The notes: generated by a model not told the origin, from the sequence alone. Positions 207 to 34,352 are shown, counted from the first letter of the stretch. The stretch is DNA of 35,154 bases from Octopus bimaculoides (GCF_001194135.2 NC_068998.1:50054481-50089634), one strand, 5' to 3'. Made by a program: numbers and translations.

Positions 207-246
207 CAACAACTAGAAGCAACATAAAAAAGGCGAATTTCTTCAT
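207..246 (-). CDS. Paralog E (partial): first coding exon (signal peptide MKKFAFFMLLLVV-G) of the secreted six-Cys family; remaining exons would lie left of the window
   Basis: ATG at 246, 13 codons plus 1 nt, then a GTAAGT donor. Same 40-nt length and phase-1 junction as exon 1 of the four other paralogs. Upstream DNA (about 250-420) aligns with the upstream DNA of paralog A. Confidence 0.75.
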
Positions 247-792
247 AGCGTTGCTCTTGTATTACTTATTAATTGTGCTCACCAAGAAGTCAGCTGCAGA
301 TAGTGACATCTTAAATAAGTATATATGTATGATGTAACACATGTGCCTCAAATAATAGTAAATATTAAGCATATTTATCCTTTTGTCGCGTAGTGATATA
401 TTTGACATGGAATATTATATATGATGGTCTAAGTCTACATGTACACCTTTCCTTTTTCTTGACCCATGCTGGTTATCAACGACAATCGACGCATATAGGC
501 TATTATATTCAGGACAAACAATGTGCCATATGTTACCGCCTACGGTCCCCATTACAGCTGCATGTGTGGAGGGATACAAAGGGACTGCATGAAGCCATAG
601 CATCAAAGAATTGACATGAAATAGTGGTGTGCTCTTTCGTAACATAGATACATAAACGGTCTTGGTGTGTCTGCATAATCCGATCCCCTGCAACATGGAT
701 CACGTACTGATGATTGTAGCACACACACGCGTGCGCCGGCACACATGCAGAAACATGCGCGCTCACGCATATATAATACCTATATATACATA

Positions 793-844
<52 letters not shown>

Positions 845-1479
845 CACACACACACAGAGCAACGCACATACATATATAAAATGTACTGCCTCGTGATAGA
901 AAATTCAACAAAATAAGCGCTCTATCTGATGAGAGATAAATATTATTTATTTATAGGGCACGATACATGCATTGAACGGATGCTAATTGTTTCATATGTT
1001 GAGAAATACGCAAACCGCTCATAAAGAACGATCGAGTTAGCCATACGTTGCCTACCCTGTTTTGGCTCGTTTCTTTTATTATTCAATACTTTTAGTTCGT
1101 TATGATACGTGATTTGCACCTTAAGAATACATCTTAGTATAAGAGTTCTATATTTGAGTGATGAGGAAGTATGTACATTATTTACATTTGACGGATATTT
1201 GGTTTGGTTGTGTGTTTGCATGTCTGTTTGTGCCAAGTTGCCGTCTACACCCGTTAACAAATTTTCGTGAAACTTTGCAAACATGTTAAAACATCGTCAA
1301 GCTGGTTACAAGGCTCATTGAAGTTTAATAAAAAAAACTGCCACAAATTTGCTTCCATGAGGCTTTAGATAAACCCTTCATCTGGTTCCAAAGGGGACAA
1401 AAGCTAATGAGGTAAATGCTAGTTATTCTACCTATGTAGCAGTGGATAACATCTGACATTCCCAACTAATATAGGACTG

Positions 1480-2266
1480 CAGCTCAGTGTTGATGATGCA
1501 GACAGAACCTTTTCAAATCAACTGTTGGACGTCAGTAATGGCACTTCGGTTGGCGAGAATGATGGCCGGATAAGTTTGCGTTTTGTTCATATGGTATCTG
1601 ATTTAAAGGACTAATGAATAACGTGTTTCCTAACCTGAGGAATCAGTTTACAGGCCACAATTGGTTGAAAAGACATGCCCTTGTAGCTCCAACGAACGTG
1701 GCAGTTGATGATTTGAACATCAAGCTCCTGGAACAGTTGCCAGGTGAGCATGACATCTATAATTTCATTGATGCTGTCCTCAACACCGATGAAGCTGTTA
1801 ACTATCCAGTTGAATTCTTGAATAATCTTGCTCCACCCGGCCTTCCAAGTCACAACGTGCACCTCAAGAATCGGACACTAATTACGCTAGTTAGAAGTTT
1901 CGACCGTCAAAGCTTTGAAATGACACAAGATTTATAGTAAAGAAGATGATGCCAACAGTCTTGGACACAACAATTTTGACTGGTAAAGCAAGCAGTGAGC
2001 CGGTATCCACTTCTAGAATTCCGCTTATTTCCTCGGATATGTCTTTCGAGTGCGAGCGCCTGCAATTCCCGTCGAAACTGAGATTTGCAATGAGCAATAA
2101 TCGGTGGTATTCCTTACCTGCGGAGGTTCTGAACTTTCCGGAACGAGTTTTCTCCCATGGCCAGTTTTATGTGGGAAACTCAAGAGTCGGTAATCTTAAT
2201 AATTTGTTTATTTATGCTCCACAAAGAAACCAAAATGGTGTTCATCAAGAAGCTCTGCAAACTTAA
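1480..2266 (+). mobile_element. Decayed Helitron Rep/Helicase fragment (C-terminal PIF1-like helicase)
   Basis: Translations NWLKRHALVAPTNVAVDDLN...AVNYPVEFLNNLAPPGLPSHNVHLK and ILTGKAS...RIPLISSDMSFECERLQFPSKLRFAMS...FSHGQFYVGNSRVG match the conserved Helitron/PIF1 helicase C-terminus. Stops and frameshifts are present and no terminal hairpin was seen. Confidence 0.9.
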
Positions 2267-2405
2267 TACAATTCACCAAATTATTAGTTGTTTGTTATTT
2301 AACTATAATATGTGTAAGTGTTGTAGATGTATTGATATTCTACGTGTTATTTTAAAATCTATATGCAAATTATTTGTATGTCTACTGTAAAATTAAACGT
2401 CAGTC

Positions 2406-2626
2406 TGTTTCTTATTGGGCTACACACAGAGGGGACACACAAGGACAGACAAACGGATTAAGTCGATTATATCGACCCCAGTGCGTAACTGGTACTTATT
2501 TAATCGACCCCGAAAGATGAAAGGCAAAATCGACCTCGGCGGATTTGAACTCTGAACGTAACGGGAGACGAAATACCGCTAAGCATTTCGCCCGGCGTGC
2601 TAACCATTCTGCCAGCTCGCCGCCTT
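2406..2626 (-). mobile_element. tRNA-derived SINE (family 1), near full length
   Basis: Minus strand begins GGCGGCGAGCTGGCAGAATGGT (Pol III A box) and carries GAGTTCAAATCC (B box). Related copies at 23587-23690, 30716-30870 and 30890-31042. Confidence 0.85.
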
Positions 2627-2689
2627 CAAGGGTTATATTCTCTTGGAACGCACAAGAGCCCTTTTTCATAGTTGTTTATTTTGAATTGT

Positions 2690-3300
2690 TATTATCTCAT
2701 ATCTGATTAGCCTGTTATTTCGTAACACGCTTCACAATTTTGGTATCAATCCCTTATTGAGATGTCCTAATAACAAGATCCTCTGTAAGACAGTTCGGTA
2801 TACTCTGTAAATACACTAAAACCGTTTTAAGGGCTACATATATTGTAGTGTTGATAAGCGAAACAATTATGAGAACAGAAACAAGAGATAAGCCCCGTTT
2901 TCTCGCGAATTACCGGTTGCACGTCAAGGAGATTGTGTTCAAAAAGACTTATACTATTATACACCACATGGATTTCGAATTCACCATCCTTTTCAGAAAA
3001 AACACTAAGCACAGCATGGGTTGAAAATCCGATTTTGATGCATTCTTCGATGCATAGAAGAGACGTACGATAGTGCGAGCATGAGCAATCTTTAACTTAA
3101 ATACCCTGAGATCCAGTTTCCCATCTCACGGTATTGGCCTATACCGTGAGGATGGTTTGGGAATATCTCATGACTTCGTTAGTCACATTCCGGAGAATTT
3201 AGGAAAAGCAAACCATTGATATCGTAAGTAGAGTTGTCCTCAAAATCGCTGTCAGCACTAATCTGTAGACAGTTAAAATTTAGATGTTTAACTGGATCAT
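2690..3300. mobile_element. Penelope-like element relic: RT fragment (+, about 2965-3300) next to a probable GIY-YIG C-terminal fragment (-, about 2690-2900)
   Basis: Plus strand reads GIGLYREDGLGIS and LKIAVSTNL*TVK, resembling the PLE GLYRDDGL...LKIT...FLDV motifs. Minus strand reads CLTEDLVI...LNKG, resembling PLE CLTEKLxI...LNKRSEL. Heavily decayed. Confidence 0.55.
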
Positions 3301-4075: not shown

Positions 4076-4626
4076 GTCTCGATTAAAACATCCTACAAAT
4101 CAGCTTCGTAGATGAATAATAATTATAGACTCATATAATTATCGTCTACGACAGTTAAAGCTGTCACTCTTTAGAAGTTTAAAGACTGGTAATAAATATA
4201 ATAAATCTTAGTATAATAAATCTTCAGTTTAACAACGAAGCCATATTTTTCAAGTGTGTAATCAGTAGATGGTGTTAAATTTGGAAATTTTGAGAAAGAA
4301 TAAAACAAATAGGTAAGTATATGTTTGGAGTATTTAACTATCCTTTTCATTAAAAAACGATACAGAAACACAAGGCTGACGCATCACAACATGCAGAGAA
4401 TAACGGTGGCAAATCGTCATGACAATATATTCTTCATTCATACATTAGAAATGCAACCAGAAGTGCTGAAAGGTTCGTTGGTGGTTGAAATGTAATCTAT
4501 AAACAGAATAGAAAAATTACAATTTACATAAATATTGAAGCAGCTGGAATGAAGTATTCAGGGATGTAGATATATGCATACACAGAGACAAACGTACGCA
4601 TATGCACGTATACATAAATCCATGTT

Positions 4627-4687: not shown

Positions 4688-6430
4688 ATGTGTGTGTGTA
4701 TGTATGTATATGTATANNNNNNNNNNNNNNNNNNNNNNNNNNNNNNNNNNNNNNNNNNNNNNNNNNNNNNNNNNNNNNNNNNNNNNNNNNNNNNNNNNNN
4801 NNNNNNNNNNNNNNNNNNNNNNNNNNNNNNNNNNNNNNNNNNNNNNNNNNNNNNNNNNNNNNNNNNNNNNNNNNNNNNNNNNNNNNNNNNTATATACACA
4901 AACATACGTACACGGAGCGAGGGATAAATTATCGACATTTTATATATTTCATTTCGAGCATGCGCATTGTTTGTTTTTGCCTTTGTCGAACACAGTAGAG
5001 TAACGTCGGTTGAACATCGTCGGTGAGAAAAAAAACATCACCATCACGTAATTCACTCTGGTAAATCTGTCATGTTAATGATGGCGGGAATGATGCGAAA
5101 ATCTTACCGCCTCTCTACAACTGCTGAAGATAGCAGAAGTTCTCAAATTTGCGACAAAATTAATAACAAGAATAGCAGCTTGCAGTAGACTGTAGCTTCT
5201 GCGCCGGTCAATGTTACTCTGATAGATAATTCCTCTCGATGGAATATTGCTAAACCTATTAGCAATGGAAATATATTATAATGAAATCAAAACAAAGATC
5301 ATAAGATTATTCGAATGCTAATCTAATGTTCTTTGTTTCAACTTCATTATAATAAAGCAATTATAATTATAATAAATACAATTATTACAATTCTACAAAT
5401 GTAATATTCTACTAATTGCCAATGTTATTAGCTCGTGAATCCCTTATTAGAGATTGTTTAATCAATCTGCATTACAATGATTCAATAACGTATGGTAGTA
5501 TTCCGGTTATATCTAAAAGAGCTATTCTATATATACATGTTGAAGAAATATCGGGGCGGTATCAAGGATAGCGGAGTAATTATTGATGCGATAGTTTAGA
5601 TGAAATGACTTACCTTATATTGGTTATTTTGAAAAGGTACTGAAATCAAAAAGCAAATATCATAAAAGTGAAAATCTACCACACAGTATTCTATCACACA
5701 CAGCTTGATGTAAAACTACTTATCGAGATTCATTCGGTATCACGTGCCAGTTAAAGCAAAGTCCAACCTCTGTTGTCACTCATGTGCATTGGCTTTTGGT
5801 TGTTGAATATGATAGTGGGAAAATAATACTGGCTGGTCTTTTCTATTTTACTGATTTCCCGAAAAGGGAGTGAGGAGAAATTATAATAATGCGCCTAGTG
5901 GCACTGACCAGTTTGGACTAAACGGAAATCACAGAGCGAATTGCTGCAGAGGTGAATGCTGAGTTTCGTTAATGCTATCATGGAAAGATAGAGACGATGT
6001 TGCGAAATAGTTTGGGCCCTACGGATTAAATATATTAGAAATTTCCAAATTTAACGATAAATGCAATTACTTTCAAGAGAGTAGATTTTACTATCCTTAT
6101 GTAGTACCAGCCTTTTTGTTTTTTTTCAGATTAGAATGGTTTTAATAGATATTTCATCTCATTTGTATATTTATAAACGCGTTACTCTTGTTAAGATATG
6201 TTTGTCGCAGCCATGTATAACTTCGCATGATATTTTAATTATTTTTACACACCTGTCCTGTTAATCCAACAGTCATGAATGGGTATTTGACAGTTATGTA
6301 ATTCTAGGGCTCATTTAATTATCGTCAAAGTTGTTAGGCATTGGTATCCTTAAAGAAAAATGTTTAAGGGATCTGCTTTACAATGAATGAATATTGAGGA
6401 ATAATATTGTAATCTTGGCTACAACAATTG

Positions 6431-7119: not shown

Positions 7120-8190
7120 ATTGTAACATTTTAATATATAGATACTGGTGTAGAATGGAAGTAGAATCGAAGACACCCCATTAATTTTTGATACAATTCT
7201 TAATATCAAATCACATACCTTTCTATAGCGATAGTTGTACTGAAAAAGCAAAGCAAAAAGTAAGTGTCAGCAATGTGAATGCTACAACAGTGTATTTAAT
7301 TTATCTTCATAAATATACATTAATTAGGATGATCCTTACAAATTATCATTACTGTATTTTTATGTGATCTGTGATAGTTCAGGCAAAGAACTAAATTTAC
7401 TGTCACATGTGTACATTAATTGCTGTAGTTGATTAAATATCATGGTAGTAAACTCCCACAAGCTGTTAATTCCATGATAGCGATTCGGTGAACAGCGATA
7501 CGAAACATAACGGTAGTGATATATTTCAAAAATAAATTATTATCTTTTAACCGGCAGTAAAATATGGTTTTAGATTGAAGCGCTTTCCTCACAATGACAA
7601 TATCATTAGAAATATTTCTGTTACAGTATATTGGTTGTACTTAAGATATACACAACATTAAACGTGGGACACTCTTTAACAACGTTGAGTTAAATTTGTG
7701 ATCCCTGCAGCATAACATACTTGAAACCTCTGCATCATAATATATTACCAAAAATTTAATGAAAAGGGAGAATAAAAAGTGTATTTGAATTATACATATT
7801 TGACTGCTTTCTATGATCGTAGTGTTTATAATCTATGTGGAATATCTGAGACGTCGACTGTGTATTTATGATAATTTTATTCACACCCACGTCTCTCGGT
7901 TACAATCGTAAGTTAACTTTATATATTTATCATAACAACAGCATTGACACACAAACCATATATTAGATAATAGTGCTATTTAAAATCTTGTTAAGAATAT
8001 CAATTTAAAGCATGCAGGAGGATGTATATTCCGCAAGTAAACACTATACTGTGTTTCTCACAATGAGTCAACAGATATTTCAGAATGAGTTAACAGATAT
8101 CAGATTACAGAAAGACAGCTTTTCTTTTAGGAGTTACATTTAATTTAGCACAAAATGAAAGATCAATAAGTAGATATTACAACTATGTAC

Positions 8191-10857
8191 CTCGCACGAG
8201 TGAGCCATTCCGAACAATAAGTAACATCTAGCGTGGGTGTCAGGTGTAAAACATTTCAAGAGGGCGTCGTAACTACTGGAATAACCAAAAAATAATTTTG
8301 AAAGATCGTTTACAACCCGAATATTCAATTTCTACGTATGAAATAAAATAATAATGTCAATTCTATTCGATATATATGACGTTCATTTCTGTTTCTACAG
8401 TTGCATCATTCAATTTCGTGTTTTGGAACCTTGCCTTCTTTGATATTATTCCTATTCTTATTTTGTTTCACATTGTGCCTATTAGTGCAGTCACTATCTT
8501 TCCTTTCCACCCGGATTGTTCCTTGGCGTTTCTGCTATAACTGAATCCTAATTTGCCTCTGCTCTACTTTTCATGCCATTTCTTCCCTTCATGCAAATAT
8601 TTCCTTTTCCAGTTGGTTTTTCTGAATATTTGTTAACATGTACCTCACTGTTATCTACTATATTATACATGTATTATCCTTATTCAAAGTTCCGCGTTTG
8701 TATTCAAGTACAAACTTACTTATCAATTTACTATTGCATGTAGAATTCCAGGTTGTGGCATGACGAAGAAAATGATCTTAACCGATGAATTTTCTTTTTA
8801 AATTGACAAATATCGTAAGTATAAATTATAATATATAATTTGATAATAAATAATAAATGTTCTCACCTCACAAAACATTGTCCACAAGGTAGACAGAAAT
8901 TCTGCATTTCCTGGAAAGGACCTTTTACGATTGTGCATATCTTATTATGGACGAAGTAAAACCATATTTATGAGATCTTATTCTCCTTAAGATACCACAC
9001 AATATCATCCAGCAACTTCGAATTACTCTTCTTGATTTTATTGAAGCTGGCGACAAGGTTTCGTTATTGCTTCTTGAAATAATCAGCGCTTCACGCACAA
9101 TACGGTGGGCATCATTTTTTTGTATGAAGAGGTATATACCTTAATTTGACATTTATATCTACGAAGAGCCCAAAAAAGTTCTTGCGAAAGAGGGTTAATT
9201 TTAACGAGATAGCATATACAAATTTTGTGTGTTAGTGAAACATAGATATGTATACTCTTCTTACGATGGTTTTGTTAGCATTTGATTGCAAATATATGTG
9301 ATATTTATCTTTGACATTTATACGATGCATGCCTGCACTCCTCGGACGTTCTCAGATAACCTCTTATTTCATGGGGGCCAACTTTCTTTGATTTATCCAC
9401 GCAAGCATTCCAAGCGTCTGAGCCCGCGGTTGCTGCACCTATACATAGAAAATAAAATCTCTTTTGTTTATATCAAGTTGAACTTTTCCGTACCAATACT
9501 AAGCTATTTGAACGGTGTAATTCATTTCTTCCATCATCATACAGGAAAATAAATCTGAAAGTTTAGATGGTGGAAACTGTTGCTGTATCATAATATTTGT
9601 TTGTAATTGAAGCTTGAAGTTGCTAAAGTAGAAGTTTTGTGAGATTTTGACACCAATTATTTTATTTGACTGCTTTGATTTCTCGTACATTGATTCTAAT
9701 ATTTTTATGTTTGGTCAAATACATTGCACAATATCGACAACGCCTTCATCTCACGGCACATCCTTATTATTACAATAACTAAATATAGCACGCTCTTAAT
9801 GACATCCAGTCAATGTCGTTGTTATAGTTATAAAGACCTTCACTTGTAACTCAAATGAATTTATATTTCTCTCCTTCATAGTTTGCCACAAATGAAACAA
9901 CAATCACATAGTAAAAAATTATACCTATGTCAAATGTCACGTAAATATATGACGAATTCATCATTACTTTCGTTAGAATATTCGTCATATCGTTTCGGCG
10001 AATTTGACTATTTCATGTAGTAATGGGCGCTGCTTTGAAACGCATTCTAAGAATAACGGTTAGGTATGTAATTGTATATGTGCATTGTGCATAAATTATG
10101 ATAAACTGAAATGTCCATAATATGAAATAATAATAGATTGAAGCTTTGACTATTGGTTACCTACGTAAGTTTCACCGTTGTGTTTGCTGGAATGATATAG
10201 TGTGTGATCGACATGAAACCGGATGCTTAACCGCTTGCATTATATAAACTTGGATAGTTGGAAGTTATTATAAGTGCGTTGGGAGTGAAGTACAGAGATA
10301 GCTCATAGAATATAGAAATAGTAAGCAAATAAGTAGATCTAAATGGGAATACAAGAAATATAATGAGAGTAAATAATTATAATTAACTAAAGATTGAATG
10401 AAAACAAAAGAAAAAAAGAAAAAGGAAATCGATATAAGATTGTGTTAAAAGGATAAAGCGTGTAAATCAAAAGTAAGCGAATAATAAATTATTAAGTATA
10501 TATAAACATATTGTTGAAAATAATAAGCGAAATATTCAGAGAAGCAATCGACAGATTTATTAGTGGGAGACTAATAAATCTGTCGATCTGTCGATAAATA
10601 TTTAAAGTGGTAGGACGAAAAATATCAATAAACGGAGAGGTATTATGATAGCTCTACAATCTGAAAGCTATAGAGATACATTTGCTGATTGATTTAATCA
10701 TCGCCATTTTAGGTGCTTAAGTGCACTGGAATACTCATGGAATACCTATGGAATACCAATGGAGTATTTATGGAATACTAATGAAGTACCAATGGAATAC
10801 TTAATACGCCTACTCACCAACAAAAAGCAGTAAAGTAAAAGTGGACAATTTTATCAT
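8191..10857 (-). CDS. Paralog A: small secreted cysteine-rich protein, divergent copy; MIKLSTFTLLLFVGAATAGSDAWNACVDKSKKVGPHEIRGYLRTSEECSSYDALLKCFTPDTHARCYLLFGMAHSCE... (last exon unresolved)
   Basis: Exons 10857-10818 (GTGAGT donor), 9438-9333 (AG acceptor, GC donor) and 8275-8191 (AG acceptor, GT donor) join in frame with phases 1 and 2. Hydrophobic N-terminus. Cys spacing matches B-D except that Cys2 is missing. Confidence 0.7.
10547..10587. repeat. Perfect 18-bp inverted repeat with 5-nt loop
   Basis: ATCGACAGATTTATTAGT-GGGAG-ACTAATAAATCTGTCGAT. Confidence 0.95.
10727..10803. repeat. 11-bp minisatellite (TGGAATACYHA), 7 copies
   Basis: TGGAATACTCA TGGAATACCTA TGGAATACCAA TGGAGTATTTA TGGAATACTAA TGAAGTACCAA TGGAATACTTA. 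Confidence 0.9.
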
Positions 10858-18809: not shown

Positions 18810-19149
18810 GGTGTTTCCTGTAAAATACTAGTTCTGATGTTGTATGTTTCAGTTCCTTGTTAGTTTTCTTTCCTCGATTCACTTCTTCGTTACTTTATCT
18901 TACACGATGCAATATAATGTAACAGATGTTTTATTGAGAGTGTAATGTCCTTATAATCTTTTTGTATTTTCATATGTAATGTACAATATTTGACGTTTAT
19001 ATGGTTTATGTGAGAATGTAGCATATTCAGTATTCATTTGCTCTCTATGTATCGACATGCTAAAGCAAAATGGAATGGAGATAAGCTTGTATGAAACCTA
19101 ATTAATATATACTTGATACATTCATATTGAGCAAAATATTCCAGATGTT

Positions 19150-19500
19150 GATATTACAGACCTCAACGAACTGAAGTATGAATCCGAGAATATCGCAACC
19201 CCACTATGTTGTGAAAAGAAGAGAAAACGACAACATTCCCACAAAATCCTAGTTGGCAAGAACGTATTCAACCACAAATCCAGTTACATATGTCTCACAT
19301 AGAATGATTGACAAGAATATCAAATCAACAGAAATCTGAAAATTAAAGAAAATATATATGAAAACCATACTTGACATCGAAACCTCCCTACAAACTCTCA
19401 AGCAAACAGTACGTGCTTAAGATGCCCGCATAGCCAGGTATTCGTCAAGGATAACAACAATTTTAAAAATAACGCAATCTAGTTTTACAGGAAGATAGGG
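19150..19500 (+). mobile_element. Old R4/Dong-clade LINE fragment, N-terminal region of the ORF
   Basis: Fragments DITDLNEL, PSWQERIQPQIQ, LQTLKQTVRA*DARIARY and FKNNAI*FYRKI resemble the pre-RT region of R4/Dong ORFs. Many stops. Confidence 0.6.
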
Positions 19501-22186: not shown

Positions 22187-24613
22187 GTGGTAGCACCAGT
22201 GATTCCTCTTGAAGCGGCTATGGCATGAACGTTCGACATTAGGAGTGAAACATTTCAAAAAGTCCTTGTAACCTCTGGAAATTTAAAGCTTATCTTGCAA
22301 ATGTCGTTTACAATATCATCATTTTAGACGATTCAATACTTTAACTATATAATGTAATGAGAATGTAAGGATTCAAAGCAACACTAATTTCCATACGTTT
22401 GAAGCGGCACTGATATGACATAGTCGTAGCTATCATTAGACTTTTGAAATATGGGAATGTCCTAAATATCACAAGTGTCCTAAATATCACAAAGCAAATT
22501 AAAGGAGTGGAAAAAAGTTATAACAAGTCAAACGGCTGGTTCTAGGTTGTCGGCAAGGTACAATAAGGAGACACGTAGTTCATCAAAATATGTTGCCGTA
22601 TGAATGCAATTAACGTTGGACGTGACGCTCCTCCGTCATCAGTATATAGAAGATCTTACATTTCAGATATTTCAGATATTAACGCAGAGAAATTCAAAGA
22701 CCATTTTTATACTCTAGGCAAAAGACACGAATTTTTTGGGAAGAGGGAACAATCGATTAGATCGACCTCAGTACAAAACTGCTATTTAATTTATAGAATA
22801 CGAATAGATTGTTAGAGCAATTGATACATAGATTTATTGATATCTGGATCAGTATCTGTATGTTATGTAATACGTTTGTATAATATGTATCTTAGAAATA
22901 ATATATTTCATACCCACAATCTCTTCTGCTGGATATGTACTGGCTATATTGATAATAACATCTTTGTTTACCCAATCCTTGGCACTCTTTCCAAGTGAAC
23001 TCTGAGGTTGCAGCATCTAGAAAGTGAAAAATATAGATTTCTTTTCATAGCGTATAGGCCCACAGCAAAACTGTATTATGAAATAAAATTTTCAACATGT
23101 CGCTACTTGAGAAAATTACTATTTCTAAATCTCACAACTAGAGATATTCTGCAACAGTACTTTGGAGTAAAGATCATTTGCCAACATAACATGGCAGTTC
23201 TGGTTTAGGAGGAATGCTGCTGTAATTTAGCCTCGAACAAGGGAATCTAGGATCCCCACTCAGCTGAAAACAATATCTGTATATCGAGATTTCCGGGTTA
23301 TTTCCCTTCATCAGCACAGAGTAATTGTTCGGCAGGTTTTTATATTCATTTAACATAAATATTTTAATTTTAAATAAATCTATAGTTTTCTTAGGCTTAA
23401 ATGATAGAAAAATGCATGAGGAATTCAGAATCGTTAGACACATTTAACAAAAATTAGTAGAAAAAAATGTTATGAGGTAAAATGTCATGAAATGCAAAAT
23501 AAGTGAGGGAGTCACAAAGGGAGTACCACCCCACACAATAATTTGAAGAATATATTTCTAAAAATGAATGTTTGTAATGTAAAATTGTGAGCTGGCAGAA
23601 GCGTTAGTTCACCGGGCGTAATTATTCACGGTATCTTGTCTGTCTATACGTTCTGAGTTCAATTTCATGCGAGGTCGAATTTATATTTCGTATACGTTAA
23701 TTTTTAAATGAAATATTTAATGAAGTTATTTTTAATATGCTGTTGAAATAGGGTAAATCTAACTTTCATTATTAATTCTGTTTCAGCTTTAATTAACTTG
23801 CTTTCTGCTTTTTTTTTTGCTTTTCCTTTTTAGTTGATTTCCTTTTCTTTTAATTAATCATTTAATGCGGCTAGTTCATAAATGCGTTATATCCTTGAGG
23901 TATATGCATCTAAATTTATTGGGGCAGGATACAATCATATTTCGCTGTGTCACTCTAGGCAAATCTGACGGCATATAATAAGGCTCTCCCCAAGGACATT
24001 GGTTTATGAGAGAATTCGGAGTTGGCTTAGAAGGGAGAACCCGTGGAAAGTGAGAGATTGTATATGGGAGGAGGTATTTGAGTCGTGCCGGCCTGGTGAG
24101 CCATCGAATAACTCACAGAAATCGACAGTGGAGTGGCTATTCAAATTCACAATGGAACATGTGTAAATTGTGGAAGGTCTAACACGACATGCTAAAAGAG
24201 TGCATATGGTGGGCACTTGATTCTCATGGCAGCCAGCACACTTGTGCAGGTTGTAAGAAAATGTGCAAAAGTTCGCCTGGCCTTAAACGACATATAAGGA
24301 CATTACACGGCAACAGTAATTAATCATTTCAGTAAGTCTTCTTGGGAATGGCTTTCCTCGTGTAACGTGGGTGCAACTATAATACGTATATTCCACTATA
24401 TTATATCTATTTACTGTGCTTTTACTTATTAATGTTTCTATATGTGACAGTGGATTTTCATCGATGAGTCCATGAACCTTGTTTCTTTTCCATAAAACTA
24501 TATATATATGTATATATATGTATATATTTAATACTGTGAAACTTAATATAATTTCAATTTTTAATAAATTGATTTTAATTGAGTTTTTACCTGTAATTTT
24601 GGATTTGTATCAC

Positions 24614-24691: not shown

Positions 24692-24777
24692 GCAATTTAG
24701 CTTTTACAGTTCCTGCTAAGGTAATAATATTACTCACGCGATATAAGAATTGCAATAAGAATGAGTATCCTTATCAT
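22187..24777 (-). CDS. Paralog C: small secreted six-Cys protein, cationic; MIRILILIAILISHAATSEFTWKECQGLGKQRCYYQYSQYISSRRDCGGYKDFLKCFTPNVERSCHSRFKRNHWCYH... (last exon probably in N gap 21790-22101)
   Basis: Exons 24777-24738 (GTGAGT donor), 23016-22914 and 22274-22187, canonical GT-AG, open frame, phases 1/2/0. Exon 4 is expected about 150 nt beyond exon 3, which falls inside the gap. Confidence 0.85.
23950..24322 (+). mobile_element. Probable RTE-clade LINE 3' end with three decayed C2H2-type zinc fingers, in intron 1 of paralog C (opposite strand)
   Basis: GRRYLSRAGLVSHRITH, CVNCGR...LTRHAKRVH (frameshifted) and CAGCKKMCKSSPGLKRHIRTLH. The SRxGLxSH motif is typical of RTE ORF2 C-termini and there are no TGEKP linkers. 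Confidence 0.6.
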
Positions 24778-25239
24778 AGCGTTTCCAATAGAATCGTGGT
24801 TCTGATTATGTGTGTTTCACTTCCTTTTCAATTTGTGTTTCGTCGCTTTACTTCTTCGTTATTTTATCTCAAACAATGCAATATAATGTAACAGATGGTT
24901 CAGTCAGAGTGTAATTTCATCGCATTTTTGTCTTTGTAAGTATTATACGATATTTGACGCTTGTATTCTATATCTGAGAATTTATTCATTTCAGTATTGA
25001 TTTGCTTCCTATGTGTCGTCATGTTAAGGCTAATTTTAACGGAGTTGTGCTAGTATGGAACCTACATGCTATATACCTCTTAAATTTATAGTGAACAGAA
25101 TATTCAAGTGTTTACATACAAGTTGTCCTGCTAAATTTGGCTGATTGGCTAAAAGGTGTGTGTAATTGGAAAAATAAAATATCCCACCTGAACATTAATG
25201 CATTTTTGAAACAATCAGGTAGATAATATCTGGTAAGTA

Positions 25240-27190
25240 ATAATTGATTTAAATTGTTCTTTCAACAACTAGTAATCGTAATGGCAAAGAATAAGTAAAG
25301 ATATATGATGCTCGAAATGAAACCTGTACGTTAATATGTATTAATATGTACACGTTGCTGAATACTCAAATATCAAACAATTTTAAAGAAAATTCGAAAG
25401 TATAATTTATTGAAGGCATATTTCAGATATCTGGAATATCACAAAAAATACCAGTTTAAAACTGGGAATCTTTATTACAGTATTTTCTTTATTTAGTTCT
25501 TCTTAAATAATATCACCACAAGTGCAGTAAGGATTGTTGATATTGGGGATGCCATCTGTAAAAAGAATAGTAAAAAAGGTTATGCATAAACGGGGAAAAT
25601 ATTGTGATATGAATTATGCAAATATTTCGTTAAAATATCTTTGCATTTATCAAATGCTTTAGAGCTTCCCTAAGAAAACAGTGCATTATTTTCCGAAGAA
25701 ACTAGTGGGAAAAGGAGATAATGATGTATTATCTTGTCTGTTAAAAATGTTTTTGCTTAAGAGAAGACAGAGTATGGCATTCCGTAAGACTCTGTACCTC
25801 CGAGATGATACTTACATGTTATATGTTGAAACACATCTGCCCCTGAACTATCCGCTGTTAGACTATGACCTTTACTATAAAGTTATGAAAGTTTTAATCA
25901 CTTTTTAGAGAATGTCTAACACTATTCTCATATAAATCCTTCATTTTCAGAACGAACAAAATGATTCTAATATTATTTACCTCGATAGTATTTAATTCAT
26001 TCTTTTATTCTTTCATTTCTTTCAGTCAATTTTTACAGCGGCCATGCCGGTGCACATGCTTAAAGGGTTCGTTAGTGGAAGAGGTCGTTGCCATTACTTA
26101 TTCTTCGGAAGCCTACTCCTTATTCAATTGCTGACCCGCTAAGTTTCGAGGGCGTAAACCTACGAATTATGGTTGCCAATCGGTAATGGAGGGACAAGCA
26201 GAGACACAAAGACACACACATAAACACATAGATATGTACGTATAAATGTACCCCGTGTCTCTCTCAGTTACCGTGTACCAAATTCATTCACTAGCGTATG
26301 ATCGGACCAAGATTATAGCAGAAGAAAATTGCCCAATATGGCATGCAGTGGGACTGATTACACAACCATTTAGTTCGGAAGCAATTGTCTTACAACAGAA
26401 GGAAGCCTGCCTGCCCATTCATAAGCATATTAGTAATAGATTTATATTATTGTAGTAAGACAGAAATGTAATTACAGCATCTGTTCAACATGTAGATACT
26501 GTAAGCAGTCGGAAGCAGTAGCATAGATAATTTACTAATAATTGATTCAATAAAAAAAAATATGCAATTACGTACATTATCTTTGTGGCTGGAACTTTTA
26601 GTGTCCTGAATGGAAAGAGCGAAAAAGGAAAGTGAACTGCTTACCACTAACATTTCATGTACCTACTCCAGAATGGAGCGTGGTTAACGTAATCATTTAC
26701 TATAGAATAGATTAATAGAATCAAAGAATCTCACTTGCACAATTAGGTGCGTTCCATTCAAGAAAGTGAGAATAGTGAAAAACGAATAATAAATTTAGAG
26801 TTTATACAAAAGTGGTGTCTTTAAACATTTTTAACACTCCAAAAGGAAACAAAGCAAGATACAATAAAAAGAGAAATATTCGTGATTCTTTTTTTTTAAT
26901 GTATCAGAATTCAAAATATTATTGCGATATTAAATTTATTCATATCTGAAGCTATATCAACTCAGCGAAACATTTTGCTTTGCAGAGATCTTTTAACTTC
27001 TAGCTTGTTTCAGTCACTAGAATGGGACTATGCCAGGTCACCACCTCAAGGAATTTTGGTCTAATTCATTTTGCATTTTATGCTTGGTACATAATCTATC
27101 ATTCTCTCTTGCCGAACACATAGGTTACGGGAAATTAAACGCGGGCATTTGTCAAACGCTTACGGGTACAAACACACAAACATACATATG
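25240..27190 (-). pseudogene. Orphan 3'-flank/3'-UTR block of the repeat unit with no coding exons attached (possible remnant of a deleted paralog)
   Basis: Aligns by eye to the downstream blocks of B (13060-14160) and C (20200-21350), including a poly(A) signal at 26935-26940 and a SINE at the same site as in C. The downstream block then recurs at 27545-28110 and 29005-29110 as D's own 3' flank. Confidence 0.45.
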
Positions 27191-27475: not shown

Positions 27476-27534
<59 letters not shown>

Positions 27535-27535: not shown

Positions 27536-28109
27536 CATATATATGAACTACGGGCTTCTTTAATTTCTGTGTGCGATATTCAGTCACAAATCTTTGATTG
27601 GACCAAGGCTATAGCAGAAAATATTTGCCCTATGTGAGTTCCAGTGGGACTGTACTAGACCCTTTTAGTTGGTAAGCAAGCTTCTTGCAACATAGCCACG
27701 CCTGTACCTCTATTGATAAGCATATTAGAAACAGACTTATATTATTGGAGTAAGATAGAAAGGTAATTACTGCGTCTGTTCAACATCTAAATACTGTACA
27801 TAGAAAACCTGAAATTACGTACCGTGTCAATGATTCTGTATCCTTTTTTGCCCTGAAAGAAAAGTGAAAATAACGTGATAGTGGAATGCTTACCAGAAAC
27901 ATTTATCTACACAAGAATGGACCATGGTTACCATAATTATTTGCTATAGAATAGATTAATAGAATCAATGAACGTCACTTCCTCACTAACATGCGTCCCA
28001 TCTAAAAAGTGAGAATATATAAAAACGAATAATAAATTTAGTGATATACTGAAGCAAATTGTAAACTCTACAACACGAAACTCTGCAAATACAACAAAAA
28101 AGGTGAGAG

Positions 28110-29281: not shown

Positions 29282-32200
29282 TTATGTATGCTGCAACAAA
29301 CTCGTATATTGGTCTGAAGTTTCTTCAAAGACGGTAGATATTTTATGATCTTCTTCTACCAAACGAATGCTTTTCTGAGATTGAAACCAGTTTTAACTTG
29401 ACATAACCGAAGATGTATTTGTAATAAGAACAATAAACTTACGCCGGTGCATCTGTGATCCATGTCGAAGCCCTTGCGACAGAAACTGTCGATACTAGGT
29501 TTGAAACATCTTGTAAATTCTACGTAACCCCTGAAAATTAAAAGCTTATCTTCAAATTTCGTTTGCATTGTGATCATTCAATACCATATAATACATTAAA
29601 TATAGAAACTAATGAAAAAATAAGCATACAAAGCTACACTAATTTCCATACGTTTCAAGAGGCATTAATAGTACGTAATTGTTGGTATCATTAAAACTTG
29701 AAATATCTGAGTGTCCTAAATCGGACAAGTGATTTCATTTACCGAATGTGTAGAAATAGCTAGGATTAATGCTAAATCCTATGGTGCGATGGCTCCTATC
29801 CGCGTTTGCTGTATGACGCAAGTAAATGACAAGGATATCTAATACGTTAGTTGTTAATATATACCGACTATCGGATTCGGAACCATTTTCCACCGTGGTA
29901 AATTTGCCATACCTTATTGCTTGTAAACACGCATAACTGATATTATATTATAGTATAAAATTATATTCTATGGTTGTGCATGTGTGTCAATGTTTGTGTA
30001 TATGCGTGCATTCACATGTGTATGATATATGTCATATGTTAAATATATATATATATTTTTTAATGTTTAGTTCCATTGTACAGTGAGTAGAAATAGCAGA
30101 GCAAATTAAAGGAGTAGAATAAAAAAGTGTTATAAATTAAACAGCTGCTTCTATGTTGTCGACGATCCATAATATTTTAGTTCATCANNNNNNNNNNNNN
30201 NNNNNNNNNNNNNNNNNNNNNNNNNNNNNNNNNNNNNNNNNNATATATATATATATATATAAATACTGAGAGGAACCTATGCTGATAATGAAATTAGGAA
30301 CGTCAAATATTAGCTATGTATTAAATAAATCAAGTACAATATATGTATATATGTATAGATGCAAAACGAGAAAAGCAAGGGGTGGAAACTGTCAGATGAT
30401 GAATATTTTTATGTATAAATATATATATATATTTTTTAATGTTTAGTTCCATTGTACAGTGAGTAGAAATAGCAGAGCAAATTAAAGGAGTAGAATAAAA
30501 AAGTGTTATAAATTAAACAGCTGCTTCTATGTTGTCGACGATCCATAATATTTTAGTTCATCAACATATGCGGTTGTATGGAGGCAATTAACATTAGACG
30601 AGGCGAACTTCCGTCATCAGAGTAGAGAAGATCATACATTACAGATCTTAATGTAGAGAAATTCGAAGGAGATTTTCTACTCTGTGTAGAAGACCCGGAA
30701 TTGTTGGGATGGGTCCAGTCGATTTGATGGAATACCGTACGAAACTGCTAATTATTTTATCGACTCCGAAAGGATGAAAAGCAAAGTCGACCTCGGAGTA
30801 ATTTGAACTCAGCGCATAAAGGCAGACGAAATACCGCTAAGTATTTCGTCCGACATGCTAATGTTTCTAATTTCTTTATTGCCATCATGGGGTAAAACAT
30901 AGAGGGGACAAACAAGGACTTACAAAGGGATTAAGTCGATTATATCGATCCCGGTAACTGGTACTTAATTCATCAACCCCGACAGGATGAAAGGCAAAGT
31001 TAACCTTGATGGAATTTGAACTCAGAACGTAAAGATAGACGATAGATAAATAGATAGATAGATAGATAGATATTTAGATTGATAGCCAGATACATAATGA
31101 TATATATNNNNNNNNNNNNNNNNNNNNNNNNNNNNNNNNNNNNNNNNNNNNNNNNNNNNNNNNNNNNNNNNNNNNNNNNNNNNNNNNNNNNNNNNNNNNN
31201 NNNNNNNNNNNNNNNNNNNNNNNNNNNNNNNNNNNNNNNNNNNNNNNNNNNNNNNNNNNNNNNNNNNNNNNNNNNNNNNNNNNNNNNNNNNNNNNNNNNN
31301 NNNNNNNNNNNNNNNNNNNNNNNNNNNNNNNNNNNNNNNNNNNNNNNNNNNNNNNNNNNNNNNNNNNNNNNNNNNNNNNNNNNNNNNNNNNNNNNNNNNN
31401 NNNTATATATAGTTTCGATAGATAGATACATACATACATACATACATACACAGGTATATTATTACAGAGATATGTAGAATGAGAGAGAGATTGATAGATA
31501 GAGTTAATGATATTTCGATATAATATCTATCTCAGAAATAATATAATTCATACCCGCAGTCTTTTGTGACGGATAAATACTTTTTATATTCAGGACCACA
31601 TTTTTCTTTCGCTAGAGCAATGCAATCATTCCAAGTGACATATAAGGTTGCAGCATCTACAAAGTGAAAGCAAATATATTTTTTTGTATATCGTATATGC
31701 AATCGAAAATTATTAGAAATATTTTAGGAAATAGACTCCTCAACATATCATTACTTACTTTTAACAATTTTGACGGAAATGGAAGGCACAGGATTTTGAA
31801 TAGTATTGCGAATTCACATAACTGACTGGCACTTTCAAGCTCGTTCACTTCAGCGTTTCATTTCGAATTATTTGATAAACAAACAATAAAGATCATATAT
31901 GTTAATTACAGTCGACAGCAGTTTTAAGATTACGATAACTTATGGAGTATTGTTAAAACCTTACCTAGATAGAATGATGTAAATATTATAAAGGATAAAT
32001 GCAAATTATGATTATTAAATTAATTTATATAAATTGTTCGCAATACAAGATACTAAGCACGAGTATCTGATTAAAGTAGCTATGACAGACAATATTTGGT
32101 TAAATTTAATCAGTCATCAGAAGAAATCTATAAAGATACGCTACGATGCCGAAAGATAATTCATGCATTTTATTACTTAATATGAATAAGGAGGATATCG

Positions 32201-32460
32201 TGCGATGACACATACGGATCAATTTTGCATCGAAATAACTGATGTCTGCAAATTTCGGTATTATATTGATATTCAGGGGCATAAGTTATCCTTGATTATT
32301 TCAGGAGTAGCTAATTTTTTTTTTATTTGGAAATGTGATTGCAGAAAAAAAAAATTTAGCTGCAGATGATCGATAATTGCATTACAGTAAATCGAAAATA
32401 AGAATGTGTACAAGCTCTCTCTCCACGTCTCTCTATCTCCCGCTGTCCCTCTCTATAGAT

Positions 32461-32495
<35 letters not shown>

Positions 32496-32521
32496 CAGAC
32501 ATATATATATATACATATATG

Positions 32522-32553
<32 letters not shown>

Positions 32554-32721
32554 TGTNNNNNNNNNNNNNNNNNNNNNNNNNNNNNNNNNNNNNNNNNNNN
32601 NNNNNNNNNNNNNNNNNNNNNNNNNNNNNNNNNNNNNNNNNNNNNNNNNNNNNNNNNNNNNNNNNNNNNNNNNNNNNNNNNNNNNNNNNNNNNNNNNNNN
32701 NNNNNNNNNNNNNNNNNNNNN

Positions 32722-32757
<36 letters not shown>

Positions 32758-33962
32758 TGTGTACAAAACTATAGATATAAGTGAAAGAAACAAGTATCTT
32801 TCTTATCGCATTCGCCGCATGTTGACATGCACCTCCTTACGACATCGTAAATATAATTTAATTAAGGCAGCTTGCTGTGCACTAGTCACCTGGATATTCA
32901 CCACTCCGAATGTTCTGCTCGTTACAAAGCAAACATAGCCTCGACATTATCCACTCTATCCCTTATATATGTGTGTATGTATTTATGCATGTACACATAT
33001 GTGTTTTTTGTGCATGCGTATGTGTTAGTTAATTCCAGGCAGTTATATCCTCATTTGAACTTGTATAATCCATGGTACCCCACTGGTTTAATCCGTAATA
33101 TATAATGCGATTATTATTGATATATGTTGAGGATTATTGAAAGTATCAATATTGGGGGAAGCAAGAGAAAAAGAATGGATAGTGAATGGATGTAATTGAT
33201 AATTTGTTTTGTACGTTACAAAACTGTTTCATTAAAAAAGGGAAAAAAACATAAGAGTACGTATAAATTTAAAACTCAAAAATAAATTAAAATACAAAAA
33301 CACCTACATATATTTTCAGTCGGAAATTTAGAAGCATTTATGTTAATCCTGTGAAACATAGTTATATTCAAACGATATGATGGGAGGAATACTTCGGGAT
33401 TGAAATAAAGCTCCTGGATGTTATGTCATTAGGTCTTTTTGGGGTTTTTTAGGCAAATATAGAGTATTCGTGGGATATCGGATACTTGTAAAAGGATAGC
33501 GGATAATATTCAATTTCAGATTCTAATATCTATGTGGCATATGGATAGAATAATAATCTAGGTGAATTAATGGTAGAAGATGAAAAAGAAAATATATGTG
33601 ATATCAATAATTCACAAGTGTTGGGTAGTATGAGGGAGGAATAGCGACGCTCTCGTTTAAATATTGTTTATAGTAAACACTGTTTAAATAGCATTGTTTA
33701 CTATAAAACAAATCAATAACTTGATAAGTGGAACACGTATCTACTGTATATCCAAACTTAACCAAGGTGAGAACGAAAAACAAAATGAAGAATACGGTGA
33801 TATAAATTCTATATTTGTAATTATGTTGTATGGTAATTTTTTGAACTTTGAATTCATTAGTACTGTTAACTAATAGTTTTCAAATATTGTCATCGTTTTG
33901 TAACATACAAATGGATTAATAACATCCATTCGTTCCACATTTTCTTTCTATCGTTTTCCCAT

Positions 33963-34044
<82 letters not shown>

Positions 34045-34352
34045 NNNNNNNNNNNNNNNNNNNNNNNNNNNNNNNNNNNNNNNNNNNNNNNNNNNNNNNN
34101 NNNNNNNNNNNNNNNNNNNNNNNNNNNNNNNNNNNNNNNNNNNNNNNNNNNNNNNNNNNNNNNNNNNNNNNNNNNNNNNNNNNNNNNNNNNNNNNNNNNN
34201 NNNNNNNNNNNTATATATATACATATATATAGATAGATAGATAGATAGATCAATGTATGAATGTATTGCGGTTTAGATACTACACCACCGCTAAGGAGAT
34301 AATATTACTTACGGGATATGAGAAGTGCAATGAAAATGAGTGTCCTTATCAT
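29282..34352 (-). CDS. Paralog D: small secreted six-Cys protein, 79 aa; MIRTLIFIALLISHAATLYVTWNDCIALAKEKCGPEYKKYLSVTKDCGGYVEFTRCFKPSIDSFCRKGFDMDHRCTG(HT*)
   Basis: Exons 34352-34313, 31656-31554, 29530-29443 and putative 29290-29282, canonical GT-AG, open frame. AATAAA on the minus strand at 29043-29048 fits a 3' end. Confidence 0.85.

What the first reader, a model, noticed from the sequence alone, without database searches (positions are those of the whole stretch)
207..34352. Hidden tandem cluster of at least five genes for an unrecognised secreted six-cysteine miniprotein
Seen: five 40-nt ATG exons (starts at 246, 10857, 18809, 24777, 34352) encode hydrophobic signal peptides and end in phase-1 GT donors. 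Four of them splice in frame to homologous exons 2 and 3 with conserved phases. The products share AAT...W-x2-C-x7-C-x13-C-x8-CFxP-x5-C-x3-F-x3-H-x-C. Indels inside exons are multiples of three. Knowledge: this spacing does not match families I know (insulin-like, CHH/ITP, ShK, Kunitz, Kazal, defensins, macins, Aplysia attractin). Inference: a lineage-restricted family of disulfide-stabilised secreted effectors. Venom/salivary toxin, antimicrobial peptide or pheromone are all possible; function cannot be read from the sequence. All exons are too short for ORF-based annotation.
Basis: partly seen in the sequence, partly recalled or inferred. Interest (0 to 1): 0.92.

Follow-up and report, generated by a model that had tools for sequence, protein, structure and literature searches.

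The report
Octopus membrane-tethered six-cysteine miniprotein cluster
The window holds five tandem copies of a real gene family, found so far only in octopuses, that encodes ~105-residue proteins with a signal peptide, a small three-helix six-cysteine domain and a C-terminal hydrophobic tail, so they are probably anchored to the cell surface rather than freely secreted.

Summary
All five genes lie on the minus strand of Octopus bimaculoides chromosome CM046618.1.

One or two micro-exons (27-30 nt) follow, then a last exon encoding a conserved hydrophobic tail. That tail looks like a GPI-attachment signal.

- Copy B lacks Cys2 and is mis-spliced, so it is probably a transcribed pseudogene.
- Exon 4 of copy C lies inside an assembly gap.
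- Copies A, D and E are already RefSeq models ("uncharacterized protein" LOC128249944, LOC128249941, LOC128249942). B and C are not called.
- The family has at least 15 copies over ~300 kb, and copies exist in O. vulgaris.
- It matches no Pfam family, PDB sequence or PDB fold. A lead to RAMPs failed a profile-profile test.
- The domain evolves fast (dN/dS 0.63-0.75). The signal peptide and tail are constrained (0.3-0.37).
- Expression is very restricted.

Verdict: a genuine, undescribed, taxonomically restricted family of moderate interest. It is better read as membrane-tethered than as a secreted effector.

The parts
207..246 (-). Gene A (RefSeq LOC128249944), coding part of exon 1 (MKKFAFFMLLLVV+G). 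Exons 2-5 lie beyond the window start.
   Evidence: P0004 begins with this peptide. The rest of the gene was located in L002.
10818..10857 (-). Gene B exon 1, coding part (MIKLSTFTLLLFV+G).
   Evidence: The junction to 9438 is seen in X13.
9324..9438 (-). Gene B exon 2 as predicted in frame (AATAGSDAWNAC...EEC, Cys2 replaced by Gly). In the RNA contigs the exon runs on to 8867 and meets a stop.
8191..8275 (-). Gene B exon 3 (SYDALLKCFTPDTHARCYLLFGMAHSCE).
   Evidence: Joints 8275|8867, 8275|10818 and 7239|8191.
7219..7239 (-). Gene B micro-exon 4 (YNYRYRK).
   Evidence: Predicted. Joints 7239|8191 and 5639|7219.
5614..5639 (-). 26-nt exon of B transcripts that splices, out of frame, into exon 2 of gene A.
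4434..4496 (-). Gene B homologue of the tail exon (ITFQPPTNLSALLVAFLMYE*). Its use in RNA was not tested.
18770..18809 (-). Gene C exon 1, coding part (MHSISILIVLLIS+G).
   Evidence: The junction to exon 2 is shown by the loose end at 17016.
16913..17015 (-). Gene C exon 2 (DAATSYISWNECKAMGKETCRPQFFQYASSRKDCG).
15682..15766 (-). Gene C exon 3 (GYKDFLECFPPSIEPSCHAGFKRIHWCF).
   Evidence: Joint 15766|16913.
14575..15201 (.). Assembly gap that most likely hides gene C's 30-nt exon 4 (NVKNSRNNDK). That exon is seen in RNA but is absent from the window.
13165..13227 (-). Gene C last exon, coding part (MASPLSTIVSAFLVIIFMHN*).
24738..24777 (-). Gene D (LOC128249941) exon 1, coding part. The 5'UTR extends to about 24845.
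22914..23016 (-). Gene D exon 2.
   Evidence: Joints 23016|24738 and 22274|22914.
22187..22274 (-). Gene D exon 3. It is skipped in one isoform.
   Evidence: The ORF is intact in three other organisms.
20782..20808 (-). Gene D micro-exon 4 (ATNNSRNNK). The alternative long form runs to 20601 and carries a stop (tail VRNFT*).
20310..20426 (-). Gene D last exon, coding part (MASPISTILTALLVILFKKN + an 18-residue extension because TAA became CAA).
   Evidence: Equals P0002.
34313..34352 (-). Gene E (LOC128249942) exon 1, coding part.
31554..31656 (-). Gene E exon 2.
   Evidence: Identical to P0001.
29443..29530 (-). Gene E exon 3.
27823..27852 (-). Gene E micro-exon 4a (GKKGYRIIDT), a local duplicate of 4b.
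   Evidence: The loose end at 26606 equals this exon. Present in P0001.
26576..26605 (-). Gene E micro-exon 4b (DTKSSSHKDN).
25493..25555 (-). Gene E last exon, coding part (MASPISTILTALVVILFKKN*).
   Evidence: Joint 25555|26576.
18770..19335 (-). Read-through exon. It takes splicing from D's exon 4 and runs through C's leader and exon 1. RefSeq models it as the last exon of LOC128249941 isoform X2.
24738..25229 (-). The homologous read-through exon from gene E into gene D's leader and exon 1.

Best explanation
The window holds five tandem paralogues (A-E, minus strand) of an octopus-restricted gene family. Each intact gene has 5-6 exons:
- Exon 1 carries the 5'UTR and a 13-residue stretch of signal peptide.
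- Exons 2 and 3 encode a ~60-residue domain. It is predicted to be three helices, each carrying two cysteines (C-x7-C, C-x8-C, C-x9-C), which implies three disulfides.
- One or two 27-30-nt micro-exons encode a polar S/N/K-rich linker.
- The last exon encodes a moderately hydrophobic peptide ending 0-5 residues before the stop.

Shown: the exon structure, the splicing, the paralogy, the restricted expression, and the conservation pattern.

Inferred: the precursor enters the ER; the C-terminal peptide is removed and replaced by a GPI anchor at a small residue in the linker; the result is a ~6-7 kDa three-disulfide helical miniprotein held on the outer face of the cell membrane.

Use of the downstream donor of exon 4 puts a stop just after the linker. 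This gives a tail-less form that is either a minor soluble variant or a non-productive (NMD-type) transcript.

The fast-evolving domain on a constrained signal-and-anchor scaffold, the large tandem cluster and the narrow expression all fit a cell-surface recognition or receptor-modulating role, analogous in logic to Ly6/uPAR proteins. They fit a toxin or antimicrobial peptide less well.

B is a decaying copy. C is intact but broken in the assembly by a gap.
For: - **Splicing.** X13 RNA contigs give every D junction, including the two exon-4 donors. They also give E's 4a|4b|5 junctions and C's 1|2, 2|3 and 4|5 junctions.
- **RefSeq agreement.** RefSeq proteins P0002 and P0001 equal my D model and my E model with both exons 4.
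- **Conserved tail exon.** It is conserved in B, C, D, E and A.
- **Family-wide C-terminus.** In 10 sequences (9 genes) the stretch after the last Cys is 29-32 residues in six. The hydrophobic core is only 8-18 residues, often interrupted by N, Q or H, and 0-5 polar residues end the protein. Small S/N/G pairs lie about 9-12 residues upstream of the core. This is the layout of a GPI signal by general knowledge; no predictor was run.
- **Selection.** dN/dS for signal peptide plus tail is 0.32-0.37, against 0.63-0.75 for the domain, with all Cys invariant in C, D and E.
- **Long-exon-4 tails.** The read-through tails are not conserved: D gives VRNFT*, E gives 42 unrelated residues.
- **Structure.** AlphaFold2 predicts helices at 22-42, 47-56 and 63-72, with pLDDT 71-89 over residues 21-70.
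- **Family size and range.** LOC128249868, -931, -940, -832 and others lie between 49.96 and 50.27 Mb. Uncalled copies lie nearby. O. vulgaris copies exist.
- **Orthologues.** DNA in three other organisms keeps the exon-3 ORF and its Cys.
- **Expression.** D's 3'UTR is held by a single RNA run among those indexed. Depth is near zero in three deep RNA runs.
Against: - No GPI predictor or experiment was available, so the omega site is assigned by eye. It is poor in some members: A has S-S-R, C has N-V-K.
- D carries an 18-residue extension after the hydrophobic core, which is unusual for a GPI signal.
- In D, E and C the uncharged stretch reaches 17-18 residues, so a short transmembrane helix cannot be excluded.
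- Tail-less isoforms are abundant in the contigs (depth 438 against 540 for D). RefSeq also has a tail-less isoform of LOC128249931 (P0009).
- The tissue of the only expressing run is unknown.
- The functional analogy to Ly6 proteins is inference only.
Confidence: 0.6

Rival explanations
1. The products are freely secreted disulfide-rich miniproteins (toxin, antimicrobial peptide or pheromone). On this reading the hydrophobic C-terminal exon is a propeptide or an irrelevant UTR reading.
For: - Signal peptide and six Cys.
- A fast-evolving domain.
- Tail-less splice forms: D's long exon 4 and LOC128249931 X2, which ends GKPSSVKPFA.
- Narrow expression.
Against: - The tail exon is conserved across distant paralogues and is under purifying selection.
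- The alternative tails of the long forms are not conserved. In D the stop lies about 160 nt upstream of a further junction, which is an NMD-like layout (inference).
- Pfam gave no significant match to any family, toxin, defensin, ShK, Kunitz, Kazal, CHH and insulin models included.
Confidence: 0.2
2. The products are type I single-pass membrane proteins with a three-helix, three-disulfide ectodomain and a very short cytoplasmic tail. That would make them structural or functional analogues, or very remote relatives, of receptor activity-modifying proteins (RAMPs), acting as accessory subunits of receptors.
For: - The architecture is the same: signal peptide, three-helix six-Cys ectodomain, membrane segment, short tail.
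- Foldseek rank 4 was RAMP3 chain 8f0k_E.
- hhalign aligns DC-x8-CFxPN..F..H with RAMP1 DC-x9-CFWPN..F..H.
- The uncharged stretch is 17-18 residues in C, D and E.
Against: - The Foldseek hit has E 6.6 and TM 0.27, so it is not significant.
- hhalign probability is 0.28 % with E 0.22 over 30 columns.
- There is no Pfam RAMP hit.
- Cys spacing elsewhere differs, and the domain is about 50 residues against about 78.
- Hydrophobic cores in other members are 8-13 residues with polar interruptions. There is no conserved W-R-S-K-type tail.
- A published search reported no RAMPs in molluscs (PMC7200681).
Confidence: 0.12
3. The copies are non-functional: transcribed pseudogenes or non-coding read-through products of a duplicated region.
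For: - B lacks Cys2 and is spliced out of frame.
- Conjoined E>D, D>C and B>A transcripts and an antisense spliced RNA exist.
- Exons are no better conserved than introns at the DNA level.
- dN/dS is high.
Against: - ORFs are intact in A, C, D and E and in orthologues of three other organisms, with every Cys kept and only in-frame length changes.
- dN/dS is 0.3-0.37 in the signal peptide and tail.
- Distant paralogues at about 25-30 % identity keep the same architecture.
Confidence: 0.04

Closest known systems
Ly6/uPAR (three-finger) GPI-anchored proteins such as CD59 and Lynx1
   Same: - Small (~70-90 residue) disulfide-rich ectodomain behind a signal peptide.
- A C-terminal hydrophobic GPI signal.
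- Tandem clusters, rapid divergence, and both soluble and anchored members.
- This is the closest match for how the family probably works (inference).
   Different: Ly6 domains are beta-strand three-finger folds with 8-10 Cys and a C-terminal CCxxxxCN motif. This family is predicted all-helical with six Cys and has no Pfam UPAR_LY6 hit. It is not a member.
Receptor activity-modifying proteins (RAMP1-3, Pfam PF04901)
   Same: - Signal peptide, then a three-helix ectodomain with three disulfides, then a membrane segment and a very short tail.
- A local C-x8/9-C-F-x-P-N motif.
- A weak Foldseek hit to RAMP3.
   Different: - No significant sequence or profile similarity (hhalign probability 0.28 %).
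- Different Cys spacing and a smaller domain.
- A hydrophobic segment too short and too polar in many members, with no conserved cytoplasmic motif.
CHCH / twin-Cx9C proteins (NDUFS5; Pfam CX9C PF16860)
   Same: Pairs of cysteines spaced about 9 residues apart on helices. These were the only, sub-threshold, database hits (E 0.2; E 0.1 in 2 of 9 members).
   Different: By general knowledge these are mitochondrial intermembrane-space proteins without a signal peptide, built from two helices rather than three. The scores are below any threshold. The resemblance is one of cysteine geometry only.
Aplysia attractin and other molluscan helical six-Cys water-borne pheromones
   Same: A molluscan, small, helical, six-cysteine protein with a signal peptide (general knowledge).
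   Different: Pfam gave no significant hit of any kind. Attractin has no membrane-anchor tail.

Membership tests
GPI-anchored protein (class, not a homology family) | N-terminal ER signal peptide | tested here: met
   By inspection: M + a basic residue (His in C) + 9-11 hydrophobic residues, then small residues at -3/-1 (S-H-A|A, S-D-A|A). No SignalP was available.
GPI-anchored protein (class, not a homology family) | C-terminal moderately hydrophobic stretch of about 8-20 residues at, or within a few residues of, the C-terminus | tested here: met
   Cores are 8-18 residues with 0-5 residues after them in 8 of 10 sequences. D is the exception, with an 18-residue extension.
GPI-anchored protein (class, not a homology family) | Omega site of small residues (omega, omega+2) followed by a polar spacer of about 6-10 residues | tested here: inconclusive
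   Good candidates by eye in E (S-S-S), D (N-N-S), LOC..940 (G-S-S) and LOC..832 (T-G-N). Poor in A and C. No trained predictor was run.
GPI-anchored protein (class, not a homology family) | Release from membranes by PI-PLC, and loss of the C-terminal peptide in the mature protein | not testable with these tools
   Needs an experiment.
RAMP (PF04901) | Significant sequence or profile similarity to RAMP1-3 | tested here: not met
   No Pfam hit at E<=10. hhalign of the 9-member profile against PDB-verified human RAMP1-3 gave probability 0.28 % and E 0.22.
RAMP (PF04901) | Three-helix ectodomain fold superposable on RAMP structures | tested here: inconclusive
   AlphaFold2 gives three helices. 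Foldseek to 8f0k_E gave E 6.6 and TMq 0.27. The models included the signal peptide and tail, and overall confidence was only moderate.
RAMP (PF04901) | A transmembrane helix of about 21 residues followed by a conserved basic cytoplasmic tail | tested here: not met
   cores are 8-18 residues. The tails (KKN, MHN, MYE, HT, N) are not conserved.
Ly6/uPAR | 8-10 Cys three-finger beta fold with a CCxxxxCN end | tested here: not met
   Six Cys, predicted all-helical. No Pfam hit.
CHCH twin-Cx9C | Two Cx9C helices, no signal peptide, Pfam CX9C above threshold | tested here: not met
   Best E is 0.1, in 2 of 9 members. NDUFS5 scored E 0.2. A signal peptide is present.
   No such hits at E<=10 for 3 full-length and 9 mature sequences.

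The most novel reading that the evidence does not exclude
These proteins could be a previously unseen fold class of membrane-tethered receptor modulators. They would be small helical, disulfide-stapled "prototoxin-like" or RAMP-like accessory subunits that arose and expanded in octopods. Their role would be to tune lineage-specific receptors, for example the expanded nicotinic-receptor-like chemotactile receptors or class-B GPCRs. Alternative splicing would switch between anchored and soluble forms.
Probability: 0.1. Interest if true: 0.8.

Novelty: new variant of a known kind. Interest (0 to 1): 0.42.

Why it matters
Octopus genomes hold many lineage-specific genes whose roles are unknown. 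This family is compact and well defined: at least 15 copies in one ~300-kb cluster, a simple predicted three-helix, three-disulfide domain, a likely lipid anchor, fast-evolving surfaces and very narrow expression.

If the anchor and a binding partner were shown, it would add a new small-domain scaffold to the short list of GPI-anchored modulators, alongside Ly6/uPAR. It would also point to a cephalopod-specific cell-surface recognition system.

On the practical side, the work:
- corrects the gene models (exons 4-5 and the tail);
- shows that one RefSeq "isoform" is a read-through into the next gene;
- finds that one exon is lost in an assembly gap;
- shows that several copies are still unannotated.

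Tried and rejected
- **Plus-strand reading.** I first read the coordinates on the plus strand, where there is no ATG. The genes are on the minus strand.
- **Gene C exon 4.** I guessed 13583..13560 from a weak alignment. RNA showed this is wrong; the real exon is not in the window.
- **Gene B 3' end.** I guessed it runs from exon 3 straight to 4496. RNA instead shows exons 7239..7219 and 5639..5614 splicing into gene A.
- **Blocked inputs.** Only RefSeq-identical proteins could be used, so C and B are not in those alignments.
- **Limited homologue search.** The three word-indexed homologue searches found only five O. bimaculoides proteins.
- E's exon 1-3 junctions therefore rest on the RefSeq model, not on reads I saw.
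- **RAMP lead.** Pursued and rejected on statistics.
- **CHCH lead.** Rejected because scores were sub-threshold and a signal peptide is present.
- **Fold searches.** Two Foldseek searches against the PDB gave nothing below E = 1.
- **Literature.** Two searches for a described octopus family of this kind found nothing relevant.
- **Tissue.** The tissue of the expressing run could not be learned because run metadata are coded.

Full report
**Where and what.** The window is identical, gaps included, to part of Octopus bimaculoides chromosome CM046618.1 (assembly GCA_001194135.2), roughly 50.054-50.090 Mb. It is 33 % G+C and has 11 runs of N, more than the six listed with the finding. On the plus strand the quoted positions carry no ATG. 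On the minus strand each is the A of an ATG that opens a 40-nt coding stretch. That stretch encodes M plus 12 mostly hydrophobic residues and is followed by GTAAGT or GTGAGT in phase 1. I call the genes A (246), B (10857), C (18809), D (24777) and E (34352).

**Exons 2 and 3.** Pattern searches and alignments place exon 2 and exon 3 as follows:

| Gene | Exon 2 | Exon 3 |
|---|---|---|
| E | 31656..31554 | 29530..29443 |
| D | 23016..22914 | 22274..22187 |
| C | 17015..16913 | 15766..15682 |
| B | 9438..9324 | 8275..8191 |

- The phases (1, 2, 0) are conserved, and length differences are multiples of three.
- C, D and E share W-x2-C-x7-C-x13-C-x8-CFxP-x5-C-x3-F-x3-H-x-C.
- B does not. It has Gly in place of Cys2 and three extra residues after Cys3, so it has five cysteines.

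Exon 3 does not end in a stop. All four copies end at a conserved donor right after H-x-C-x(1-2). Contigs of the one RNA run that holds these genes (X13) show the following for gene D, all with GT..AG on the minus strand:
- the junctions 24738|23016, 22914|22274 and 22187|20808;
- then either 20782|20426 (a 27-nt micro-exon 4) or 20601|20426 (a 207-nt long exon 4);
- plus a form that skips exon 3.

The short-exon form translates to a 124-residue protein that is exactly RefSeq LOC128249941 isoform X1.

For E, two 30-nt micro-exons (27852..27823 and 26605..26576, a local duplication) and the last exon (25555..) are joined in X13. They reproduce RefSeq LOC128249942 isoform X2.

For C, the junctions exon 1|2 and 2|3 are confirmed. 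Its last exon (13227..) is joined upstream to TTC|AACGTTAAAAATTCCAGAAACAATGATAAG. The TTC is the end of exon 3. The 30 nt that follow encode NVKNSRNNDK, the counterpart of D's ATNNSRNNK, and occur nowhere in the window. Exon 4 of C therefore lies in an assembly gap, most likely 14575-15201. This probably explains why no protein is called for C in the annotation. None of the other gaps cuts an exon; they lie in introns or between genes.

**Gene B.** X13 shows several B forms:
- exon 1 joined to 9438, but the exon then runs on to 8867 and meets a stop;
- another form joining exon 1 directly to exon 3, out of frame;
- downstream, exon 3 going to 7239..7219, then to 5639..5614.

The last of these exons splices out of frame into exon 2 of gene A. 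With its missing cysteine and no called protein, B is best read as a transcribed, decaying copy.

**Gene A.** A is intact. P0004 (LOC128249944, 107 residues) starts with the peptide of the exon at 246..207. Its other exons lie beyond the window start.

**The C-terminal exon.** The last exon encodes:
- MASPISTILTALVVILFKKN* in E;
- MASPLSTIVSAFLVIIFMHN* in C;
- the same core plus an 18-residue extension in D, where TAA became CAA;
- VTVHSSVVLSALAVTLLILNKVQV* in A;
- a recognisable relic in B.

Across 10 sequences from 9 genes, the part after the last cysteine is 29-32 residues in six. It consists of a polar S/N/G/K-rich spacer, a hydrophobic core of only 8-18 residues (often broken by N, Q or H) and 0-5 terminal polar residues. 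By established knowledge this is the layout of a GPI-attachment signal rather than a stable transmembrane helix. No trained predictor was available, so this step is inference.

Nei-Gojobori estimates among C, D and E give dN/dS of 0.32-0.37 for signal peptide plus tail, against 0.63-0.75 for the cysteine domain. The tail is therefore translated and constrained, while the domain surface changes fast.

The peptides produced by the long-exon-4 forms are not conserved: VRNFT* in D and 42 unrelated residues in E. These forms look like non-productive or minor soluble variants.

**Fold and relatives.** AlphaFold2 predicts three helices (about 22-42, 47-56 and 63-72), each carrying two cysteines. pLDDT is 71-89 over residues 21-70.
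- Pfam gives nothing for three full-length or nine mature sequences. The only exceptions are sub-threshold CX9C hits, E 0.1 in 2 of 9.
- A family profile against all PDB sequences gives only NDUFS5, a twin-Cx9C protein, at E 0.2.
- Two Foldseek searches of the PDB give nothing below E = 1.

One weak hit, RAMP3 (8f0k_E, E 6.6), prompted a proper test, because RAMPs share the architecture and a C-F-W-P-N motif. I verified the human RAMP1-3 sequences against PDB chains and ran hhalign. The result was probability 0.28 % and E 0.22 over 30 columns. That is no evidence of homology. A published survey also found no RAMPs in molluscs (PMC7200681).

**Family size and range.** A full HMMER scan of 1.84 billion representative proteins found nine proteins at E<=1e-3. 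Eight are octopus proteins: seven from O. bimaculoides and one from O. vulgaris. The ninth (P0005) is an unnamed repeat protein from a sequencing-run assembly and looks spurious. The O. bimaculoides hits all lie on CM046618.1: the A, D and E products plus LOC128249940, -931, -868 and -832. The O. vulgaris hit is a 302-residue model that fuses several copies.

The O. bimaculoides loci lie between 49.96 and 50.27 Mb. One arm is on the minus strand and one on the plus strand, with further small uncharacterised genes beside them. Uncalled exon-2/exon-3 pairs lie nearby. The O. vulgaris locus holds at least three exon-2/exon-3 gene copies, with further partial copies, over 109 kb.

DNA runs of three other (coded) organisms carry the D region at about 93-94 % identity. 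Exon 3 is open, its cysteines are kept, and most changes are amino-acid replacements (S>N, RN>EF, F>L).

**Expression.** Among indexed RNA runs of the species, only X13 holds D's 3'UTR. Three deep 2026 RNA runs show essentially no reads on the D exons. The tissue of X13 is hidden by coded metadata.

**Interpretation.** The genes and the family are real, and no description was found by the two literature searches or in any database searched. The product, however, is better described as a membrane-tethered, probably GPI-anchored, three-helix miniprotein than as a secreted effector (confidence about 0.6).

The rivals are:
- a freely secreted form (about 0.2);
- a short transmembrane anchor with a RAMP-like role (about 0.12);
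- general non-functionality (about 0.04).

A cell-surface recognition or receptor-modulator role, by analogy with Ly6/uPAR proteins, is the most economical functional guess, but nothing here tests it.

The novelty is that of a new family within a familiar class: taxonomically restricted, tandemly expanded, small disulfide-rich surface proteins. Three of the five copies already exist as "uncharacterized protein" models in RefSeq.

Noticed in passing
window 7483-7907, 8744-8814, 13675-13729, 16919-17034, about 25203-25238 (+ strand): A spliced plus-strand RNA lies antisense to genes B, C and the E/D spacer. All its junctions are canonical GT..AG on the plus strand, it has no long ORF, and its depth is comparable to the sense transcripts. 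One exon overlaps exon 2 of gene C. Two exon ends (17034 and 25238) splice to a common exon starting GCCTGGAATCAAACTGG... that is not in the window.
   Followed up: partly
window 18770-19335 and 24738-25229 (- strand); 5614-5639: Conjoined transcripts run along the cluster. Exon 4 of D splices to an acceptor at 19335 and reads through C's leader and exon 1. The homologous exon 25229..24738 links E to D. B's 3' exons splice into exon 2 of A. RefSeq LOC128249941 isoform X2 (P0003, tail ISVDLIFLS...) is such a read-through, not a true alternative C-terminus.
   Followed up: partly
window 14575-15201 (gap): A coding micro-exon (exon 4 of gene C) is seen in RNA but is missing from the assembly, presumably inside this gap. 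Gene C has no protein model in the annotation.
   Followed up: yes
window 10936-11038 vs 11237-11339; 30022-30187 vs 30399-30563: The sequence on the two sides of gap 11039-11236 is 100 % identical over 103 nt. A 167-nt block at 97 % identity ends at gap 30188-30242, with its second copy about 150 nt beyond the gap. These look like unmerged overlapping contig ends, so the gaps may be scaffolding artefacts with no missing sequence.
   Followed up: no
window 26557-26870 vs 27804-28102; 28657-28896; 27363-27534: Intron 3 of gene E holds a ~300-nt local duplication that created a second micro-exon 4; both copies are used in RNA. It also holds a 32-nt tandem array (7.6 copies) and an (ATAG)43 microsatellite.
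   Followed up: partly
window 22739-22800 and 14144-14740: Very high-copy repeats lie inside introns. Word depth reaches 10,000-65,000 in DNA runs of other species at 22739-22800, and up to 1,000,000 at 14144-14740. They are presumably SINE-like or other transposable elements shared across octopus species.
   Followed up: no
window 20363-20368 (- strand), gene D last exon: The stop codon used by E and C after ...FKKN / ...FMHN is CAA in D. This extends D's protein by 18 residues (QINKLLQYKFDVLILYFF), which may alter or disable its C-terminal signal.
   Followed up: no
L005 3978-4450 and about 19225 (O. bimaculoides, around LOC128249931): Further exon-2/exon-3-like pairs of the family (for example WQSCTHIAEKICDGELKLYVEKKQNC + YKNLLICLENKIAPDCYNLFKVVHSC) occur where no gene is called. 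The family is under-annotated beyond this window.
   Followed up: no
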